The notes below the pieces were generated by a model. The model was not told the origin of the DNA. It worked only from the letters and a program-made list of their open reading frames with translations, and ran no database searches. The position numbers and the translations under genes were made by a program. From the IMG/VR virus record IMGVR_UViG_3300023257_000007, positions 62,001-126,000 of that record: a DNA stretch of 64,000 nt. One strand, given 5' to 3'. Positions 3,936 to 18,436 of this stretch are shown in pieces (position 1 is the stretch's first letter; each line of letters starts with the position of its first letter).

Positions 3936-6092
3936 ATGGAAGAAAATACAGAAAATACAAATCAACCAAAATACCCTTGGTTAGCAAAATTTGCAATAAA
4001 TTTAAATGATTATGCATCTAAAGGTAAATTAAAACCAGTAATAGGTAGAGACGAAGAAATTCGTAGAATATTACAAATACTTTCCAGAAAAACTAAAAAT
4101 AATCCAATAGTTATAGGTGAATCAGGTGTTGGAAAAACATCTGTTGTTGAAGCATTAGCCCAAAGAATAGTTGATGGTGATGTACCTGAAAATCTTAAAG
4201 ATAAAGTAATAGCATCTTTAGATTTAGCTACATTAGTTGCTGGTGCAAAATATAAAGGTGAATTCGAAGAAAGAATACAAACCATTGTAAAAGAAATAAT
4301 TGAATCTAATGGTCAAATTATACTTTTTATTGATGAAATTCACACATTAGTTGGTACAGGTGGTGGAAATGGTGCAATGGATGCTGCAGGTATTTTAAAA
4401 CCTATATTATCAAGAGGTGAAATTAGAGCAATTGGTGCAACAACTATTGATGAATATAAAAAATCAATTGAGCAAGATAGAGCATTAGATAGAAGATTTC
4501 AAACAGTTATGATTGATGAGCCTGATAAATTTCAATCAATTTCAATTTTAAGAGGTATTAAAGATAGTTTTGAAAAACATCATGATGTTAGAATAGTAGA
4601 TAGTGCTATTATAAGTGCTGTAGAATTATCAATAAGATATGTATCTGATAGATTTTTACCAGATAAGGCTATTGATTTATTAGATGAAGCTTGTTCTAAA
4701 TTAAGATTAGAAATAAATTCTGTACCAGGTGAAATTGATGAAATATCTAGAAGAATTCAACAATTAGAAATTGAAAGAGAAGGTTTAAGAATGGAAGGAA
4801 ACAATAAAAAAGTTTCAAAAATTACATCTGAAATAGATTCATTAACTGAAAGCTTAAAAACTTTTAATTTACAATGGAACAAAGAAATAGAACTTGTTGA
4901 TAATATTAAAATATTAAAAAAAGATTTAGCTGGATATAATAATGATATCGAAAAATTTAGAAATGAAGCATATTACGAACATGTAGCAAAATTACAATAT
5001 GGTATAATACCAAAAGTAGAACTAGAAATAAAAGAACTAGAAGATAAACTTAAAGAAATACAAAAAGGTGTCCAACTTGTTGATGAAGAAGTTGATGGTG
5101 AAGATATAGCAGAAATTGTAGCAAAATGGACTGGTATACCAGTTTCAAAAATGTTAAAATCTGAAAAAATAAAATTAGTAAATCTTGAAGATGAATTACA
5201 TAAAAGAATTATTGGCCAAAATGAAGCTGTAACAGAATTATCAAACGCAGTAAGAAGAAGTAGATCCGGATTACAAGATACAAAAAAACCAATTGGTTCT
5301 TTTATTTTCTTAGGAACCACCGGAGTTGGTAAAACAGAAACAGCAAAAGCACTAGCTGAATATTTGTTTGATGATGAAAATGCAATGGTAAGAATTGATA
5401 TGAGTGAATATATGGAAAGACATGCCGTAGCTAAATTAATCGGTCCCCCTCCAGGTTATATTGGTTATGAAGAAGGTGGTCAATTAACAGACCAGGTAAG
5501 AAGAAAACCTTATTCAGTAATTTTATTTGATGAAATTGAAAAAGCTCACCCTGATACATTTAATACCTTATTACAAGTATTAGATGATGGTAGATTAACT
5601 GATAATAAAGGTAGAACTGTTGATTTTAAGAACACTATTATTATTATGACTTCTAATATTGGTTCTCATATTATTAGAGAAAATTTTGAAAAATTAACTG
5701 ATGAAAATAGAGAAGAAGTTATTAAAAAAACCAATGATGAAGTAATGGAAGTTTTAAAAAATACTGTAAGACCAGAATTTTTAAATAGAATTGATGAAAT
5801 TGTGACATTTCAACCATTAACAAGAGAAGAAATTAAAAAAATTGTAGTATTACAATTTAACTCAATCAAGAAAAGATTACCAGACGTTGAATTAGAATTA
5901 ACAGAAAAAGCTCTTGATTATTTAACATTAAAATCATATGATCCTCAATTTGGAGCTAGACCAGTTAAGAGAACATTACAAGATACAATTTTAGATGATT
6001 TATCAATGTCAATTTTAAAAGATGAAGTTAAAAAAGATGATGCTATTTTAATTGACTATGATGGTGAGAAAATAACATTTGACAATAAATAG
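3936..6092 (+). CDS. clpB: ClpB AAA+ disaggregase lacking the N-terminal Clp-repeat domain
   Basis: PVIGRDEEIRR, GESGVGKT, FIDEIH, GATT, ALDRRFQ, FLPDKAIDLLDEA, middle coiled-coil, GTTGVGKTE, RIDMSEY, FDEIEKAHP, GRLTD, FGARP. Confidence 0.96.
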   Translation: MEENTENTNQPKYPWLAKFAINLNDYASKGKLKPVIGRDEEIRRILQILSRKTKNNPIVIGESGVGKTSVVEALAQRIVDGDVPENLKDKVIASLDLATLVAGAKYKGEFEERIQTIVKEIIESNGQIILFIDEIHTLVGTGGGNGAMDAAGILKPILSRGEIRAIGATTIDEYKKSIEQDRALDRRFQTVMIDEPDKFQSISILRGIKDSFEKHHDVRIVDSAIISAVELSIRYVSDRFLPDKAIDLLDEACSKLRLEINSVPGEIDEISRRIQQLEIEREGLRMEGNNKKVSKITSEIDSLTESLKTFNLQWNKEIELVDNIKILKKDLAGYNNDIEKFRNEAYYEHVAKLQYGIIPKVELEIKELEDKLKEIQKGVQLVDEEVDGEDIAEIVAKWTGIPVSKMLKSEKIKLVNLEDELHKRIIGQNEAVTELSNAVRRSRSGLQDTKKPIGSFIFLGTTGVGKTETAKALAEYLFDDENAMVRIDMSEYMERHAVAKLIGPPPGYIGYEEGGQLTDQVRRKPYSVILFDEIEKAHPDTFNTLLQVLDDGRLTDNKGRTVDFKNTIIIMTSNIGSHIIRENFEKLTDENREEVIKKTNDEVMEVLKNTVRPEFLNRIDEIVTFQPLTREEIKKIVVLQFNSIKKRLPDVELELTEKALDYLTLKSYDPQFGARPVKRTLQDTILDDLSMSILKDEVKKDDAILIDYDGEKITFDNK

Positions 6093-6803: not shown

Positions 6804-7178
6804 TTGCGTTCAGATCCATTAGGAATAACAGATTTTATCACGAGACCTGAATTTCTATCAAAGTTATCTGAATATTATGATGGTGATATAAATAATATCA
6901 TAACTAAAAATATCTTACAAAGAATCGGTTTTTATAATGCTAGTTTAAACTTCTCAAAAGGCACTTCATATGCTACTACAGGTCCTAATTACTATGATGT
7001 AGAAAAACTCGTTTCTGGTTTTTTGAAACAACCAGATTTTTCTCTAGAAGATTATATTGAAAAATTCATTGATGCTGACGAAGATAGATGGCGAAGTATA
7101 AGGAAAACGTATAAAACAGATAAATTAAAAGAAAAATATAAATACTTTAGCGAAGCTGGTAAACTCGGATTATTTTAA
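6804..7178 (+). CDS. Hypothetical protein with C-terminal EAGKLGLF motif
   Basis: 124-aa ORF with TTG start; C-terminus resembles those of the 22531 and 23226 ORFs. Confidence 0.65.
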   Translation: MRSDPLGITDFITRPEFLSKLSEYYDGDINNIITKNILQRIGFYNASLNFSKGTSYATTGPNYYDVEKLVSGFLKQPDFSLEDYIEKFIDADEDRWRSIRKTYKTDKLKEKYKYFSEAGKLGLF

Positions 7179-7909
7179 GTATTTATATTATCAAGAAGTT
7201 CCTTTAAATATTTTTTCTTATTCGATTTATATTCTTCTTCAATTATTCTAATTAATTTAATATTATTATCTAGACAATATTCATCTAACAATTTATCTAG
7301 ATGAACAACCTTTTCATATTTTTCTGGTGTGCCTAATTTTTCATATAATTCTTTTGATCTATGCCAAATACCATCATATTCAATAAATAATTTCCTGTCA
7401 GAAAAAGTTATATCAACAGATTTACTATCAATTTTATTAAATGTTATTATCCTATGTGATTTAACATTATGTTCACCATATATTTTTTTGAGATACTTTC
7501 TTATTTCACGTTCACCCTTCGAAGAACATCTACTATTATTTGGTCCTCTTAAATTTTGAATACATTTTTCTCTATATTCTAAATCATTATTTAATTTATA
7601 AATAATTGATTTACTTATTTTATCTTTAGTTTCTTTACTATGTTCTCTCGTATTTGCACATGATCGACTACAAAAATATTTTTCTTTAATTGGAAATTTT
7701 TTAGATGGTTCTTTTACATTAAATTTAACACCACAATTATTACATATTACTTCATAATCAGTTACAACTCCTTGCTCATTTATCATTCTTTTGTGTCTGG
7801 CTTTAATAAGATTATCCTTTGAAGGTTTTTTATGTTTCCATCTTATGTGATTGGCTTTAATTTTAGCATTATCAAATTCTTCATCACAATATTCACAAGT
7901 ATATTTCAT
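7175..7909 (-). CDS. Free-standing putative homing endonuclease: C2H2-like and CxxC zinc fingers plus Vsr/DUF559-like PD-(D/E)xK domain
   Basis: CEYC..HIRWKH, CNNCG..YFCSRSC, SSKGEREI, VDITF..LFIEYDGIWH, IKLIRI; own TATATA at 7929-7934. Confidence 0.8.
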   Translation of the reverse strand: MKYTCEYCDEEFDNAKIKANHIRWKHKKPSKDNLIKARHKRMINEQGVVTDYEVICNNCGVKFNVKEPSKKFPIKEKYFCSRSCANTREHSKETKDKISKSIIYKLNNDLEYREKCIQNLRGPNNSRCSSKGEREIRKYLKKIYGEHNVKSHRIITFNKIDSKSVDITFSDRKLFIEYDGIWHRSKELYEKLGTPEKYEKVVHLDKLLDEYCLDNNIKLIRIIEEEYKSNKKKYLKELLDNINT

Positions 7910-7980
7910 TTTTCATATTATTTTTAACTATATATTAAAACTACGAGGTTCAATTCAATACTATTCCAAATACATAAAAC

Positions 7981-8007
7981 AAAAAAGCCACATAATGTGG
8001 CTTTTTT
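7981..8007 (-). terminator. Intrinsic terminator immediately after tmRNA
   Basis: aaaaaagccacat/atgtggctttttt inverted repeat, a few nt from the tmRNA 3' end. Confidence 0.8.
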
Positions 8008-8028
8008 TAGTGGAGCATTCGGGATTCG

Positions 8029-8245
8029 CTTTTTTATCCAAAAATTTCTTAATGGCGTGGACTATATCATCAACCTAATTAGGTTGCCGGGCGCTCTAGG
8101 ATGTATGTCATCTAGTCTCTGAACCTTCCATTTCTAAATTAATAGCTTGGCTGCTGATTGCCGTATCTTTTTTTAAAAGACTTAGGGTTCCAGCAATTCA
8201 CCCAGTTTTTTCATTATATGTTACCATATAAGGGGTCCGAATTTA
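8029..8245 (-). mobile_element. Group I intron (217 nt, no ORF; P7.1 hairpin suggests subgroup IA) inserted in the tmRNA T-loop
   Basis: P AATTGCTGGAA (8188-8198), Q AATCAGCAG (8151-8159), R GTTCAGAGACTA (8113-8124), S GATATAGTCC (8059-8068); P1 GGGUU|..GACCC with U:G at the 5' splice site; P10 AUUCG/CGAAU; P3 CUGGGUG/CGCCCGG; terminal G at 8029. Confidence 0.93.
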
Positions 8246-8404
8246 AACCCGAGTTCACAACAAGTTCCAGTTCGCTTTCTACAGATATATTTTATTTTTT
8301 CACAAACAAACAAAATATTCAATCTTTTTTATTTCAGGAAAATTGAAAAATCCCTATTCTATTTTATTTAAATACGATTAGACGTGTCGTACTTGTTGAT
8401 TTGT

Positions 8405-8491
8405 CTAGGCAACCACTTCCAGAGCAGATTCAACAACTGCTTCTTGTGAAGTTACAATATCAAAGATATCATCGGCTATTTCTATATTGCC
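8405..8491 (-). other. tmRNA tag reading frame (A)GNIEIADDIFDIVTSQEAVVESALEVVA*
   Basis: Resume codon GGC after TTAAAT; 28 codons to TAG; hydrophobic/Ala C-terminus. Confidence 0.8.
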
Positions 8492-8594
8492 ATTTAAAAT
8501 TGTTTATCTCCGTATTTTACTTGAACTGAGATTTGACAAGATCTGCTTACTAACCTTCATCGAGAGTGTCTAAAGCCTGTATGCCCCATATTTT

Positions 8595-8747
8595 TTAAGA
8601 ACGTTGTCTACCTTGACCTCTACCTACACCTCTACCATTTCTTTGTCCATTATTAGAATTATTTTCTTCTGATGGTTTACATTTACCTAAACCTCTTCCT
8701 GTTCTAGGTCCGTTTTCATTTGGGCCTTTTCCATTTTGATTTGCCAT
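8595..8747 (-). CDS. Small Gly/Arg-rich protein, DUF5320-like (not in ORF track)
   Basis: 50 aa MANQNGKGPNENGPRTGRGLGKC...GRGVGRGQGRQRS, matching the GxGPxTGRGxGxC signature; TATATA at 8764-8769. Confidence 0.75.
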   Translation of the reverse strand: MANQNGKGPNENGPRTGRGLGKCKPSEENNSNNGQRNGRGVGRGQGRQRS

Positions 8748-8803
8748 ATTTACTTTTTTATTTTATATATTATTCTATTTATACTGAATTTTTCTAAAAA
8801 AGT

Positions 8804-9196
8804 TTATTCTTTATCTAAAAGTGGTATAATTTGATCTTGTATTTCTTCTTGTGTAATACCAGGATATTTTTCTAAAATATTATTATATAATGTAGTACTC
8901 TCTTCTTTTAAAGATTCAATTTTTTCAAAATTAGGTTGTAATTCTTTTTGTGTCTGTAACATAACTCTTTCAATATCATTCAACTTAGAATTTAACTCTT
9001 TTTGAAATGGTTCATCAGTTTCAACTATACCATTATAATCTTTAACCATCCCCTCTAACAGAGAATAAATATTATTTATTTCTCCTTTATATTGATTTAG
9101 AATTTTTTCTTTTTCTTTTATTTTTTCTAATTCAATAAAATACTCTTTTCGTATCCTAATAGCAGAATAAATATATTGTTTATTAATTTTCGACAT
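8804..9196 (-). CDS. Hypothetical coiled-coil protein
   Basis: 130-aa ORF overlapping the upstream stop. Confidence 0.7.
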   Translation of the reverse strand: MSKINKQYIYSAIRIRKEYFIELEKIKEKEKILNQYKGEINNIYSLLEGMVKDYNGIVETDEPFQKELNSKLNDIERVMLQTQKELQPNFEKIESLKEESTTLYNNILEKYPGITQEEIQDQIIPLLDKE

Positions 9197-17053: not shown

Positions 17054-17054
17054 G

Positions 17055-17126
17055 TGGAGCCTACGGGAATCGAACCCGTGTCTTCTGAGTGCAAGTCAGA
17101 AATAATAGCCTCTATACGAAGGTCCC
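17055..17126 (-). tRNA. trnA: tRNA-Ala(TGC)
   Basis: GGGACCT/AGGCTCC acceptor with G3:U70 (one A:C mismatch); anticodon arm TCTGA-CTTGCAC-TCAGA; GGTTCGATTCC. Confidence 0.92.
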
Positions 17127-17133
17127 ATTTTTG

Positions 17134-17207
17134 TACTCCCGATTGGACTCGAACCAACAACTTCTGCCATGTAACGGCAGCACTCTACGCAATTGAGCTA
17201 CAGGAGC
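17134..17207 (-). tRNA. trnV: tRNA-Val(TAC)
   Basis: GCTCCTG/CGGGAGT; CTGCC-GTTACAT-GGCAG; GGTTCGAGTCC. Confidence 0.92.
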
Positions 17208-17212
17208 GTTTG

Positions 17213-17286
17213 TAGTCTCGATGAGATTCGAACTCATGACCTCTTGCACGTCAAGCAAACACTCTAACCAACTGAGCTACGAAACT
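17213..17286 (-). tRNA. trnV: tRNA-Val(GAC)
   Basis: AGTTTCG/CGAGACT; TAGCTCAGTTGGTTAGAGT D-arm; TTGC-TTGACGT-GCAA; GAGTTCGAATCTC. Confidence 0.93.
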
Positions 17287-17290
17287 ATAG

Positions 17291-17361
17291 TACTCTCGAA
17301 GGGACTCGAACCCCCACTAAGGGTTTAGAAGACCCTTGTGCATCCATTACACCACGAAAGC
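17291..17361 (-). tRNA. trnR: tRNA-Arg(TCT)
   Basis: GCTTTCG/CGAGAGT; AGGGT-CTTCTAA-ACCCT; GGGTTCGAGTCCC. Confidence 0.92.
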
Positions 17362-17362
17362 A

Positions 17363-18055
17363 TTAACACATTTTCAATTTTTTAATTATATCACTAATAG
17401 TGCCTTTTGAAGCACAAAAATATTCAGCAATTTTAACTTGTTTAATATTTTGATTAAAATACATATCATAAACTTTTTCTCTATCAATTTTTGGTTGTTT
17501 ATATTTCAAATTATTAGATTTTTCTATAATTTCATCAAGATTTTCGTAGAAAAATTTTGAATCTGTATGTTTTATTGTGTGACAATTTCTACATATTATT
17601 TTACATTTATCTAATTCATTTTGTACTTTTTCACTCAAATCTTTTATACTATCAAATCTACTAGTTATATCACTTAAAATAAAATCCTTATTTCTTTCAT
17701 GATGAAAATTTAATGACGAATTACATTTATTATATCCACATATATAACATTTATCATCACCTAAATATTTTAAATAAATGTGTTTGTTGTGTCTCTTATT
17801 AGAAACTTTGCCAATTTTTTCATGTAATTCTTGATGACAATTTTGACAATATAATTCACACTTTTTTAACTCTTTCTCTATTATATTCCAGCTATAATTT
17901 CTTAAAACATTTAATGATTCTTTTTTATCATCTATATGATGAAAACACAATTTTAATATATTATCTTCACCACACATTTTACAAGAACCACCAAGTAATT
18001 TAACTGCTTTGTACTTTTTAGCAAAAACTAATATTTTTGTTGATAATTTTTTCAT
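17363..18055 (-). CDS. Double-HNH homing endonuclease-like protein with C-terminal HTH, inserted in the tRNA cluster
   Basis: Two CxxC..L.FHH..C...CxNCH..H units plus QVKIAEYF..SKGTISDII; real start is the ATG at 18055 (the track's 18100 start runs through a palindrome). Confidence 0.85.
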   Translation of the reverse strand: MKKLSTKILVFAKKYKAVKLLGGSCKMCGEDNILKLCFHHIDDKKESLNVLRNYSWNIIEKELKKCELYCQNCHQELHEKIGKVSNKRHNKHIYLKYLGDDKCYICGYNKCNSSLNFHHERNKDFILSDITSRFDSIKDLSEKVQNELDKCKIICRNCHTIKHTDSKFFYENLDEIIEKSNNLKYKQPKIDREKVYDMYFNQNIKQVKIAEYFCASKGTISDIIKKLKMC

Positions 18056-18104
18056 GTTCGAGGTTTTAATTTTATATATTAAAATTAAAACCTCGAACAT
18101 GAAA
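18050..18104 (-). promoter_or_regulatory. Perfect 25-bp hairpin with late promoter TATATA at the apex; stem includes the HNH start codon
   Basis: tttcatgttcgaggttttaatttta / taaaattaaaacctcgaacatgaaa, 5-nt loop tatat. Confidence 0.85.
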
Positions 18105-18108
18105 TTTG

Positions 18109-18182
18109 AGCGAATGAACGGATTCGAACCGTCACCTCAACTTTGGAAGAGTTATATGCTAACCATTAAACACCACATTCGC
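18109..18182 (-). tRNA. trnG: tRNA-Gly(TCC)
   Basis: GCGAATG/CATTCGC, U discriminator; TAACT-CTTCCAA-AGTTG; CGGTTCGAATCCG. Confidence 0.94.
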
Positions 18183-18192
18183 TTATTTCTTG

Positions 18193-18265
18193 ATCCCCCT
18201 GTCGGAATCGAGCCGACTTCCCCGATTTACAAGACCGGACATAATCCATTAAATGCTTAGGAGGA
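18193..18265 (-). tRNA. trnT: tRNA-Thr(TGT)
   Basis: TCCTCCT/AGGGGGA; CCGGT-CTTGTAA-ATCGG; T-loop CTCGATT (C at position 54). Confidence 0.88.
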
Positions 18266-18273
18266 ATATATAG

Positions 18274-18353
18274 AACCCCAAGTGGGACTCGAACCCACAT
18301 TTTCAATTCCAATTACCGATAACTGTTTCGAAGACAGAACGGATTACTGAGGT
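18274..18353 (-). tRNA. Atypical tRNA-like gene with Arg(TCG) anticodon; no canonical D-arm, expanded variable region
   Basis: ACCTCAG/TTGGGGT acceptor; CTGT-CTTCGAA-ACAG anticodon arm; GTGGG-TTCGAGT-CCCAC T-arm; only about 8 nt between acceptor and anticodon stems. Confidence 0.7.
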
Positions 18354-18362
18354 ATTTATTTG

Positions 18363-18436
18363 TATAAGCGGTGAGAGTCGAACTCACAATAATCCTCAGT
18401 CCAAGTGAGGCAACCACGCCAATGGATCGCGCCTAT
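18363..18436 (-). tRNA. trnP: tRNA-Pro(TGG)
   Basis: ATAGGCG/CGCTTAT; CCTCA-CTTGGAC-TGAGG; GTGAG-TTCGACT-CTCAC. Confidence 0.88.

What the first reader, a model, noticed from the sequence alone, without database searches (positions are those of the whole stretch)
8405..8491. Unusually long, acidic tmRNA tag (28 aa) ending in VVA
Seen: the resume codon GGC after TTAAAT opens GNIEIADDIFDIVTSQEAVVESALEVVA-TAG. Established: most bacterial tags are about 10-12 aa and end in (L/Y)AA for ClpXP/FtsH/Lon recognition; Bacteroidota tags often start with Gly. Inference: a tag nearly three times longer with 7 Asp/Glu may route rescued nascent chains to a different protease or chaperone (the phage's own ClpB or AAA ATPases), or stabilise them against host degradation.
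Basis: partly seen in the sequence, partly recalled or inferred. Interest (0 to 1): 0.7.

Follow-up and report, generated by a model that had tools for sequence, protein, structure and literature searches.

The report
Intron-split megaphage tmRNA, long acidic tag
A giant phage of Bacteroidota carries its own ribosome-rescue RNA (tmRNA), hidden from gene finders by a self-splicing intron; its peptide tag is about three times longer and much more acidic than its hosts' tag, and related phages conserve it, so the tag sequence probably matters to the phage.

Summary
On the minus strand, 8491 to 8405 reads GGC, 27 more sense codons, then TAG (28 aa, 7 Asp/Glu, no Lys/Arg, ending VVA). It lies in a real tmRNA gene (8587-8011) that ARAGORN and whole-window Rfam scans miss. 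The cause is a 217-nt group I intron (8245-8029) that splits the T-loop after its second U. Spliced in silico, the 360-nt RNA is called a tmRNA.

Five distinct relatives from megaphage contigs, including the 735-kb LR756501, carry homologous 32-33-aa tags. Four of them have no intron and score 61-81 bits with Rfam tmRNA. These tags show third-position-biased variation (6/1/11), dN/dS of 0.19-0.43 and length differences in whole codons. Four sampled Bacteroidota tmRNAs also resume at GGC, at the same position, but encode 9-aa tags.

The phage also encodes SmpB. No ClpP, Lon or FtsH protease was found in the 344-kb record, which is about half complete.

The tag is long, real and under selection, but within the known 8-35-aa range (Mycoplasma 27 aa, phage Bxz1 25 aa, also with 7 acidic residues). 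A link to the nearby ClpB is not supported. The tag's function is untested.

The parts
8011..8587 (-). Whole pre-tmRNA gene (exon 1, group I intron, exon 2). The mature RNA is 360 nt and CCA is not encoded.
   Evidence: The in-silico spliced sequence is called a tmRNA by ARAGORN over 1-360. The unspliced gene gives only a weak Rfam tmRNA match (8.2 bits), and ARAGORN finds nothing in the window.
8246..8587 (-). Exon 1 (mature nt 1-342): the acceptor 5' strand GGGGCAU (8587-8581), a D-loop-like GGCUUUAGAC, PK1, the tag frame, the downstream pseudoknot region and the 5' half of the T-arm, ending ...UCGGGUU.
   Evidence: The acceptor pairs with AUGCUCC (8018-8012), giving G3:U70 and discriminator A8011.
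8506..8540 (-). Proposed pseudoknot PK1: CUUG(48-51)/CAAG(65-68) and AUCUC(56-60)/GAGAU(78-82). A 14-nt spacer ending UAAAU follows.
   Evidence: Paired by eye. Compensatory changes against the LR756501 clade occur in both stems. This was not tested statistically.
8405..8491 (-). Tag reading frame: resume codon GGC (8491-8489), 28 sense codons and stop TAG (8407-8405).
   Evidence: GGC is the ARAGORN resume codon in 4 of 5 relatives. The Rfam alignment of L141 places it opposite the consensus resume codon. Bacteroidota tmRNAs resume at GGC at nt 94-96.
8029..8245 (-). Group I intron, 217 nt, with no ORF inside, inserted in the T-loop after its second U (UU|CGAAU).
   Evidence: Rfam RF00028 scores 100.2 bits, E 1.9e-26. 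P1 is GGGUU/GGACCC with U8246.G8237. P10 is CGAAU (8028-8024)/AUUCG (8242-8238). The last intron base, G8029, is the omega G. Splicing there rebuilds UUCGAAU, as seen in intronless relatives. An alternative 3' site at G8038 gives no tmRNA call.
8011..8028 (-). Exon 2: the rest of the T-loop, the T-stem 3' strand, the acceptor 3' strand and the discriminator A.
7981..8007 (-). Intrinsic-terminator-like hairpin and T-run just after the tmRNA 3' end.
   Evidence: 12 pairs; 2 such sites in the region against 0.3 expected.
7175..7909 (-). Free-standing HNH-type endonuclease-like gene directly downstream of the intron-containing tmRNA.
   Evidence: phrog_559 HNH endonuclease, E 1.6e-11. It is 47% identical to the ORF in the same place after the intron-containing tmRNA of LR756501. 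It is absent after the intronless relatives L139, L141 and L152.
8595..8747 (-). Small Gly/Arg-rich ORF (DUF5320) ending 7 nt before the tmRNA 5' end. The tmRNA is probably co-transcribed with it and cut out.
   Evidence: Pfam PF17253, E 1.6e-8; coordinates. Co-transcription is inferred.
3936..6092 (+). ClpB-like two-ring AAA+ protein. Listed as context only; it is not shown to be linked to the tag.
   Evidence: Pfam AAA, AAA_lid_9, AAA_2 and ClpB_D2-small, with no Clp_N. Its homologue in LR756501 is 365 kb from that tmRNA.

Best explanation
This is a functional phage copy of the Bacteroidota-type ssrA (tmRNA) gene.

Shown: the gene is split in its T-loop by a group I intron. Removing the intron at the sites set by P1 and P10 rebuilds a canonical tRNA-like domain with G3:U70. 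The phage also encodes SmpB. The tag frame is conserved, with a coding-type substitution pattern, in related megaphages.

Inferred: the precursor is transcribed with the upstream small ORF. The intron then splices itself out, the ends are trimmed and CCA is added. The RNA is charged with alanine and, together with phage SmpB, enters stalled ribosomes. Translation resumes at GGC (mature nt 97), 14 nt after PK1 and behind UAAAU, which supplies the conserved U(-5) and A(-4). It adds Ala plus 28 residues and stops at UAG.

More weakly inferred: the nonpolar end (VVA-COOH) still works as an ssrA-like degron for host AAA+ proteases. The conserved long, acidic, aliphatic-rich body adds a second recognition element, for Lon-like recognition or an adaptor, or keeps rescued fragments soluble until they are degraded.
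For: - Gene and intron: the spliced RNA is called a tmRNA. The intron scores 100 bits and has contiguous P1 and P10 pairings.
- Relatives: four intronless relatives score 61-81 bits with Rfam tmRNA against a cut-off of 47. They show the uninterrupted T-loop UUC(G/A)A(A/C)U. Acceptor and T-stems covary between lineages.
- Resume codon: GGC is ARAGORN's choice in 4 of 5 relatives. It aligns with the Rfam consensus resume codon. It sits at the same position as GGC in four Bacteroidota tmRNAs. UAAAU|GGC is invariant in all six. In E. coli, A at -4 and U at -5 set the frame, and 11 nt separate PK1 from the resume codon (PMC2481249).
- Translation of the whole frame: variable sites by codon position are 6/1/11 (P = 0.014), and 2/0/7 in the N-terminal half (P = 0.008). 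dN/dS is 0.19-0.43, and the tag is half as variable as the region after it. Tag lengths of 28, 32 and 33 aa differ by whole codons.
- Partner and host: phage SmpB scores 169.7 bits and is 55-63% identical to Bacteroidota SmpB. LR756501 also has SmpB.
- Degron reading: terminal LVA is a ClpX substrate (PMC10862746). The long Mycoplasma tag is read mainly by Lon (PMC8403727).
Against: - There is no RNA evidence. All runs that hold the sequence are DNA metagenomes, so transcription, splicing and tagging are unobserved.
- In the window itself ARAGORN prefers GAT at nt 115, whose upstream UAGCC resembles E. coli UAGUC.
- The strongest selection evidence comes from the LR756501 clade, not the window's own lineage, for which only identical copies were found.
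- The acidic residues near the C-terminus could weaken ClpX recognition, because the best E. coli tags are neutral or slightly positive (PMC10862746).
- The record is about 48% complete, so phage proteases or adaptors may exist in the unseen half.
- A credible tRNA with anticodon CUA in the genome might read the tag's UAG stop.
Confidence: 0.62

Rival explanations
1. The same tmRNA resumes at GAT (mature nt 115, window 8473-8471), so the encoded tag is the 22-aa DDIFDIV...EVVA.
For: This is ARAGORN's own call for the window. The upstream AAAUAGCC resembles E. coli AAAUAGUC, with U(-5) and A(-4) (PMC2481249).
Against: - The site lies 32 nt from PK1, against 11 nt in E. coli and in the relatives (PMC2481249).
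- That sequence context is not conserved in any relative, whereas UAAAU|GGC is invariant.
- GGC matches the resume position of Bacteroidota tmRNAs and of the Rfam consensus.
- Codons 2-6 keep their frame across a one-codon indel between the window and the clade.
Confidence: 0.12
2. The long tag is a specificity switch. It directs rescued chains mainly to a protease other than ClpXP (Lon-type recognition of an extended hydrophobic stretch, as in Mycoplasma) or to a still unidentified phage factor. This differs from the best explanation only in which reader dominates.
For: - The 27-aa Mycoplasma tag is recognised mainly by Lon (PMC8403727).
- The phage tag has 11 large aliphatic or aromatic residues in 28.
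- An internal motif, A-(D/E)-D-(I/M)-(F/M)-x-I-x-T-S, is shared between the window and the LR756501 clade. This suggests a recognition site beyond the C-terminus.
- Phage Bxz1 independently has a 25-aa tag with 7 acidic and no basic residues.
Against: - No phage Lon, ClpP, FtsH protease domain or SspB was found in the 344 kb held.
- The neighbouring ClpB is not syntenic with the tmRNA in the relative.
- Nothing here measures protease preference.
Confidence: 0.3
3. The tag is not a degradation signal. The phage needs only ribosome release, and the acidic tail merely keeps the fragments soluble or inert.
For: In E. coli, survival depends on ribosome release rather than on proteolysis (PMC8012679). 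A net charge of -7 would favour solubility.
Against: Purifying selection acts along the whole peptide, and every relative keeps a nonpolar X-X-Ala end (VVA, VLA, ILA, VMA). Solubility alone would not require that.
Confidence: 0.15
4. The UAG stop of the tag is read through by the phage's tRNA with anticodon CUA. The tag would then gain nine residues and end at the next UAA, giving a different C-terminus.
For: A well-formed tRNA(CUA) gene lies at G000 140629-140701. The window's tag ends in TAG, with an in-frame TAA nine codons later. The relatives use TAA.
Against: The held genome does not show TAG recoding. Long-ORF coverage is 0.807 under code 11 and 0.822 with TAG read as sense, against 0.837 for the TGA control. 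No long ORF is interrupted by a single TAG, and 19 long ORFs end in TAG. The extension is not conserved in relatives.
Confidence: 0.08
5. The gene is a decaying or non-functional copy whose intron is not removed, and the open frame is a relic.
For: There is no expression data. The intron of the LR756501 type appears to end in A, not G, if the T-loop is to be rebuilt.
Against: The window has intact P1 and P10, an omega G and a strong intron core score. Covarying stems and a coding-type substitution pattern are seen across lineages. SmpB is retained.
Confidence: 0.05

Closest known systems
Bacteroidota chromosomal tmRNA (ssrA), tag GE(E/N)NYALAA
   Same: The resume codon GGC sits at the same position (nt 94-96 against 97). 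The overall length is similar (371-396 nt against 360). The 5' tRNA-like domain is similar (GGnUUUGACAG against GGCUUUAGACA). The phage SmpB partner is 55-63% identical.
   Different: The tag is 28 aa instead of 9. Its net charge is -7 instead of -1. It ends in VVA instead of LAA. The region after the tag is about 60 nt shorter. The D-loop-like element has one extra A, shared by all six phage sequences.
Intron-form tmRNA genes, T-loop subsite 3 (PMC11915505)
   Same: A group I intron lies in the T-loop with -1 U and an omega G, and splicing rebuilds the loop. The site after the second loop nucleotide matches that paper's position 3, which it found only in class Bacteroidia.
   Different: This copy is in a phage genome. 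That survey included RefSeq viruses, and its text does not mention a viral intron form. The gene is flanked by a free-standing HNH-like endonuclease gene rather than having a LAGLIDADG gene inside the intron.
Mycobacteriophage Bxz1 tmRNA
   Same: It is phage-encoded, and ARAGORN gives a 25-aa tag with 7 acidic residues, no basic residues and a nonpolar end. It is listed among phages with ssrA in PMC4131195.
   Different: The phage and host phylum are unrelated. The gene has no intron, the resume codon encodes Ala, and the tags share no sequence similarity.
Mycoplasma tmRNA long tag (27 aa) read by Lon (PMC8403727)
   Same: The tag is of similar length and rich in hydrophobic residues, and its length is tied to protease choice.
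   Different: It is cellular, not viral. Those organisms lack ClpXP, whereas Bacteroidota do not. The Mycoplasma tag is not markedly acidic.
tmRNA and SmpB of huge phages (PMC7162821)
   Same: The nearest named relative is the 735-kb phage of that study, and that paper notes tmRNA and SmpB in huge phages.
   Different: That study called tmRNAs with ARAGORN, which does not call the intron-containing gene in this window; LR756501's gene has the same intron form. The tags are not discussed in its text.

Membership tests
tmRNA (ssrA; Rfam RF00023) | A tRNA-Ala-like acceptor stem with a G3:U70 pair and discriminator A | tested here: met
   GGGGCAU (8587-8581) pairs with AUGCUCC (8018-8012). G8585.U8014 is the third pair and A8011 is the discriminator. 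G3:U70 is invariant while pairs 4-7 covary in relatives.
tmRNA (ssrA; Rfam RF00023) | A T-arm with a canonical 7-nt loop | tested here: met
   This holds only after intron removal: UCGGG-UUCGAAU-CCCGA. Intronless relatives have the same arm uninterrupted.
tmRNA (ssrA; Rfam RF00023) | Recognition by dedicated detectors | tested here: met
   ARAGORN calls the spliced 360 nt. Rfam gives 61-81 bits for four intronless relatives. The unspliced window gene scores only 8.2 bits and ARAGORN finds nothing. The spliced window sequence could not be given to the Rfam tool.
tmRNA (ssrA; Rfam RF00023) | A pseudoknot PK1, then a short single-stranded spacer with A at -4 and U at -5, then the resume codon | tested here: met
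   PK1 was proposed by eye at nt 48-82. A 14-nt spacer ends in UAAAU, followed by GGC. The rule comes from PMC2481249. PK1 covariation was not tested statistically.
tmRNA (ssrA; Rfam RF00023) | A short internal reading frame with no start codon, closed by a stop codon, and translated | tested here: inconclusive
   The frame is open and conserved, with third-position bias and low dN/dS in relatives. Translation itself was not observed, because there are no RNA or protein data.
tmRNA (ssrA; Rfam RF00023) | SmpB partner present | tested here: met
   Pfam SmpB scores 169.7 bits at G000 82646-83065.
tmRNA (ssrA; Rfam RF00023) | Alanylation and trans-translation activity | not testable with these tools
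   This needs biochemistry or in vivo tagging assays.
Group I intron (Rfam RF00028) | Conserved catalytic core | tested here: met
   100.2 bits against a gathering score of 50, E 1.9e-26, covering the full model.
Group I intron (Rfam RF00028) | A 5' splice site after a U paired with G in P1, an intron ending in G, and a P10 pairing with the 3' exon | tested here: met
   U8246.G8237, G8029, and CGAAU/AUUCG. The LR756501-type intron does not show a terminal G at the equivalent place.
Group I intron (Rfam RF00028) | Self-splicing | not testable with these tools
   No RNA runs hold the sequence.
ClpXP-type ssrA degron | A C-terminal nonpolar tripeptide of the L-A-A type with a free carboxylate | tested here: inconclusive
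   The end is V-V-A, and V-L-A, I-L-A or V-M-A in relatives. L-V-A is accepted by E. coli ClpX (PMC10862746), but V-V-A behind Glu has not been tested.

The most novel reading that the evidence does not exclude
Megaphages of Bacteroidota have evolved a private tagging system. It would consist of an SmpB-tmRNA pair whose long, acidic, conserved tag is read by something other than the host's standard ssrA pathway. Candidates are a phage factor in the unseen half of the genome or a different host protease. Chains rescued during infection would then be handled separately from host-tagged chains. Under this reading, the similar tag composition in the unrelated mycobacteriophage Bxz1 would reflect convergence on the same solution.
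Probability: 0.2. Interest if true: 0.75.

Novelty: new variant of a known kind. Interest (0 to 1): 0.5.

Why it matters
Phage tmRNAs are usually listed in genome papers without comment, and their purpose is unknown.

Here the tag is three times the host length. Divergent megaphages conserve it, it evolves like a coding sequence, and it comes with a phage SmpB. That makes a specific question testable: does a phage change the fate of rescued nascent chains, rather than only adding rescue capacity?

The case also shows a practical blind spot. Intron-form tmRNA genes in phage genomes go unseen by ARAGORN and by Rfam scans of long sequences, so phage tmRNA counts are probably underestimates.

Tried and rejected
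- ARAGORN and Rfam on the whole window found neither the tmRNA nor the intron. Only a 1.3-kb Rfam scan found the intron.
- An alternative 3' splice site at G8038 is rejected. ARAGORN finds no tmRNA in that product, and the T-loop would carry 9 extra nucleotides.
- The 14-nt pattern search in viral contigs returned mostly chance matches. One gapped pattern was mis-specified and found nothing. The corrected one gave no new relatives.
- blastn of a relative's tmRNA against the phage collection found only LR756501 and LR756503.
- A search for expression found no RNA runs. Laying four DNA runs gave identical copies, no variants in the tag and no intronless allele.
- Phage-encoded ClpP, Lon, FtsH protease domain and SspB were not found in the 344-kb record. 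The record is incomplete, so this is not proof of absence.
- Conserved ClpB-tmRNA linkage is rejected.
- TAG recoding of the genome is rejected for the held sequence.
- A normal-length tag from a much later resume codon is rejected. Third-position-biased variation already appears in codons 5-18 of the relatives.
- No complex prediction was run, because no binding claim is made.

Full report
**Observation.** Read on the minus strand, window 8491 to 8405 is GGC followed by 27 sense codons and TAG, preceded by TTAAAT. It translates to GNIEIADDIFDIVTSQEAVVESALEVVA. It has three Asp, four Glu and no basic residue, net charge -7. An open frame of this length in such A+T-rich DNA has a chance probability of about 0.12. 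The frame alone therefore proves nothing, and the case rests on context and comparison.

**What the locus is.**
- ARAGORN finds seven tRNAs but no tmRNA in the window. Rfam at gathering threshold finds only tRNAs.
- A permissive Rfam scan of 7800-9100 gives a group I intron at 8038-8256 on the minus strand (100.2 bits, E 1.9e-26). It also gives a weak tmRNA match at 8235-8580 (8.2 bits).
- The minus strand begins GGGGCAUACAGGCUUUAGAC at 8587 and carries CGAAUCCCGA-AUGCUCC-A at 8028-8011.
- The intron's guide sequence pairs with both exon ends without a break. P1 is GGGUU/GGACCC with the wobble pair U8246.G8237. P10 is CGAAU (8028-8024)/AUUCG (8242-8238). The intron's last base is G8029.
- Joining 8587-8246 to 8028-8011 gives a 360-nt RNA. 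ARAGORN calls it a tmRNA over its full length.
- That RNA has the acceptor stem GGGGCAU/AUGCUCC, with G3:U70 and discriminator A, and the T-arm UCGGG-UUCGAAU-CCCGA.
- A 3' splice site at G8038 gives nothing.
- CCA is not encoded. A terminator-like hairpin follows at 8007-7981.
- A 50-codon DUF5320 ORF ends 7 nt before the 5' end.

**Genome and host.**
- The window is part of a 344,634-bp IMG/VR virus record estimated at 48% complete. Its G+C content is 25% and it has 35 tRNA genes.
- The nearest named relative of the locus is the 735-kb uncultured phage LR756501. That phage belongs to the Mahaphage clade, with predicted Bacteroidetes hosts (PMC7162821).
- The record encodes SmpB (169.7 bits). 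This SmpB is 55-63% identical to SmpB of Bacteroidales, Cytophagales and Flavobacteriales.
- LR756501 also encodes SmpB.

**Relatives of the tmRNA.** Pattern scans of viral and metagenome contigs gave five further distinct sequences.
- LR756501 type (L006, L149, L155): it has the same intron at the same site (Rfam intron 96 bits, tmRNA 21 bits).
- L139, L141/L145, L152 and L157: these have no intron.
- The four intronless genes score 61-81 bits with Rfam tmRNA, above the cut-off of 47. They show the uninterrupted T-loop that the splice model predicts.
- Acceptor pairs 4-7 and the outer T-stem pairs covary between lineages, while G3:U70 is invariant.
- Only identical copies of the window's own version were found (L135/L156).

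**Where translation resumes.** Five lines of evidence favour GGC at mature nt 97.
1. ARAGORN chooses the homologous GGC in four of the five relatives, giving 33-aa tags such as GDYKMNAEDMMSIPTSLTGKVATESFVEDLVLA. In the window and in L157 it chooses a later in-frame codon.
2. The Rfam alignment of L141 places GGC opposite the consensus resume codon with high posterior probability.
3. Four Bacteroidota tmRNAs (Cesiribacter, Draconibacterium, Tamlana, Dysgonomonas) resume at GGC at nt 94-96 and encode GE(E/N)NYALAA.
4. UAAAU|GGC is invariant in all six phage sequences. It supplies U at -5 and A at -4, the positions that set the frame in E. coli (PMC2481249). The spacer from the proposed PK1 is 11 nt in the relatives and 14 nt in the window, against 11 nt in E. 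coli. ARAGORN's alternative, GAT, would lie 32 nt from PK1.
5. The frame is kept across a one-codon indel between GGC and the shared motif that begins A-(D/E)-D.

The alternative site gives a 22-aa tag in the same frame, so the tag is long under either reading.

**Is the frame translated?**
- Among the four 33-codon relatives, variable sites fall 6, 1 and 11 at codon positions 1, 2 and 3 (P = 0.014). In codons 2-18 alone they fall 2, 0 and 7 (P = 0.008).
- One Leu codon changes at two positions and still encodes Leu (CTT to TTG).
- Replacements are mostly conservative (M/I, V/I, F/L, D/N).
- Nei-Gojobori dN/dS is 0.19-0.43. The tag has 17.6% variable sites, against 34.6% in the region after it.
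- Tag lengths of 28, 32 and 33 residues differ by whole codons.
- By eye, the window's tag aligns with the clade's at the start (G-N), at A-(D/E)-D-(I/M)-(F/M)-x-I-x-T-S, at E-S, and at the nonpolar X-X-Ala end.
- This is good evidence for selection on the peptide along its whole length. It rules out a normal-length tag from a much later resume codon.
- It is indirect for the window's own lineage. No RNA or protein data exist, because all runs holding the sequence are DNA metagenomes from salt lakes and sea water.

**Interpretation.** The locus is best read as a working phage ssrA-smpB pair of Bacteroidota ancestry. The function of the long tag is inferred, not shown.
- Every member ends in two nonpolar residues and Ala. 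E. coli ClpX accepts terminal L-V-A about as well as L-A-A (PMC10862746). Degradation by host AAA+ proteases therefore remains the simplest reading.
- The conserved internal motif, the 11 large nonpolar residues and the strong negative charge suggest a second recognition element or a solubilising role.
- The precedent for length changing protease choice is the 27-aa Mycoplasma tag, which is read mainly by Lon (PMC8403727).
The protein has the ClpB domain set without an N domain. It is the only Clp-type ATPase in the record. ClpB-type unfoldases have no protease partner (general knowledge). Its 63%-identical homologue in LR756501 lies about 365 kb from that phage's tmRNA.
- No ClpP, Lon, FtsH protease domain or SspB was found in the held half of the genome.

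**Comparison with what is known.**
- tmRNA tags range from 8 to 35 aa (PMC8012679), and the commonest length is 10 (PMC11915505).
- Phage tmRNAs are known (PMC4131195, PMC7162821).
- ARAGORN gives mycobacteriophage Bxz1 a 25-aa tag that, like this one, has seven acidic and no basic residues. It gives Bacillus phage G a 13-aa tag.
- Intron-form tmRNA genes are known in bacteria at four T-loop subsites. The subsite used here, after the second loop nucleotide, matches position 3 of PMC11915505, which that study found only in class Bacteroidia.
- Each feature is therefore known separately. What the library searches here did not turn up elsewhere is the combination: an intron-form tmRNA in phages, and a conserved tag family three times the host length in megaphages.

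**Caveats.**
- The genome has a well-formed tRNA with anticodon CUA, and the window's tag ends in UAG, with a UAA nine codons later.
- The held sequence nevertheless shows no TAG recoding, so UAG is taken as the stop.
- In three independent assemblies, the LR756501-type intron ends in A rather than G at the point that would rebuild the T-loop. This is unexplained.

Noticed in passing
window 7175-7909 (-); L006 1856-2629: An HNH-like endonuclease gene (phrog_559) lies directly downstream of both intron-containing tmRNA genes, and the two copies are 47% identical. The intronless relatives L139, L141 and L152 run straight from the tmRNA to a DHFR-like gene without it. The intron and a free-standing endonuclease gene therefore co-occur, which resembles collaborative homing.
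   Followed up: partly
L006 about 1737-1745; also L149 and L155: In the LR756501-type tmRNA intron, the base before the 3' exon CGAAUCCC is A, not the usual terminal G. Three independent assemblies agree. Either the splice sites differ from the window's or this intron breaks the rule.
   Followed up: partly
G000:C1 140629-140701 and 112614-112688 (outside the window): Two tRNA genes have anticodon CTA, which reads UAG. The first is well formed (57% G+C). The second is doubtful because its acceptor stem is all A-T. The held 344 kb shows no TAG recoding, and 19 long ORFs end in TAG.
   Followed up: yes
window 8038-8256: Both whole-window Rfam scans (gathering and E-value modes) miss a 100-bit group I intron that a 1.3-kb scan finds. 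Other structured RNAs in the window could be missed in the same way. blastn finds no second copy of this intron in the 344-kb record.
   Followed up: partly
window 8588-8603; the same place in L006, L139, L141, L152 and L157: A conserved leader motif, GTTCTT(T)(G/A)A, lies 8-16 nt upstream of the mature tmRNA 5' end in all six phage sequences. Four of the five relatives also have TAnnTTTG about 75 nt upstream, which from memory matches the Bacteroidota -7 promoter element.
   Followed up: no
window 8567-8578 and relatives: All six phage tmRNAs have GGCUUUAGAC in the D-loop-like element, where four Bacteroidota tmRNAs have GG(U/C)UUUGAC. That is one extra A in the part of the tRNA-like domain that (from general knowledge) SmpB contacts. 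It might mark co-adaptation with the phage SmpB.
   Followed up: no
window 17054-18436 (-): A cluster of seven tRNA genes (Ala, Val x2, Arg, Gly, Thr, Pro) is part of the 35 tRNA genes in the record.
   Followed up: no
G000:C1 300001-340000 (outside the window): This region has very low coverage by long ORFs (0.36-0.40) under every stop-codon assumption tried. It holds nine tRNA genes and is otherwise unexplained.
   Followed up: no
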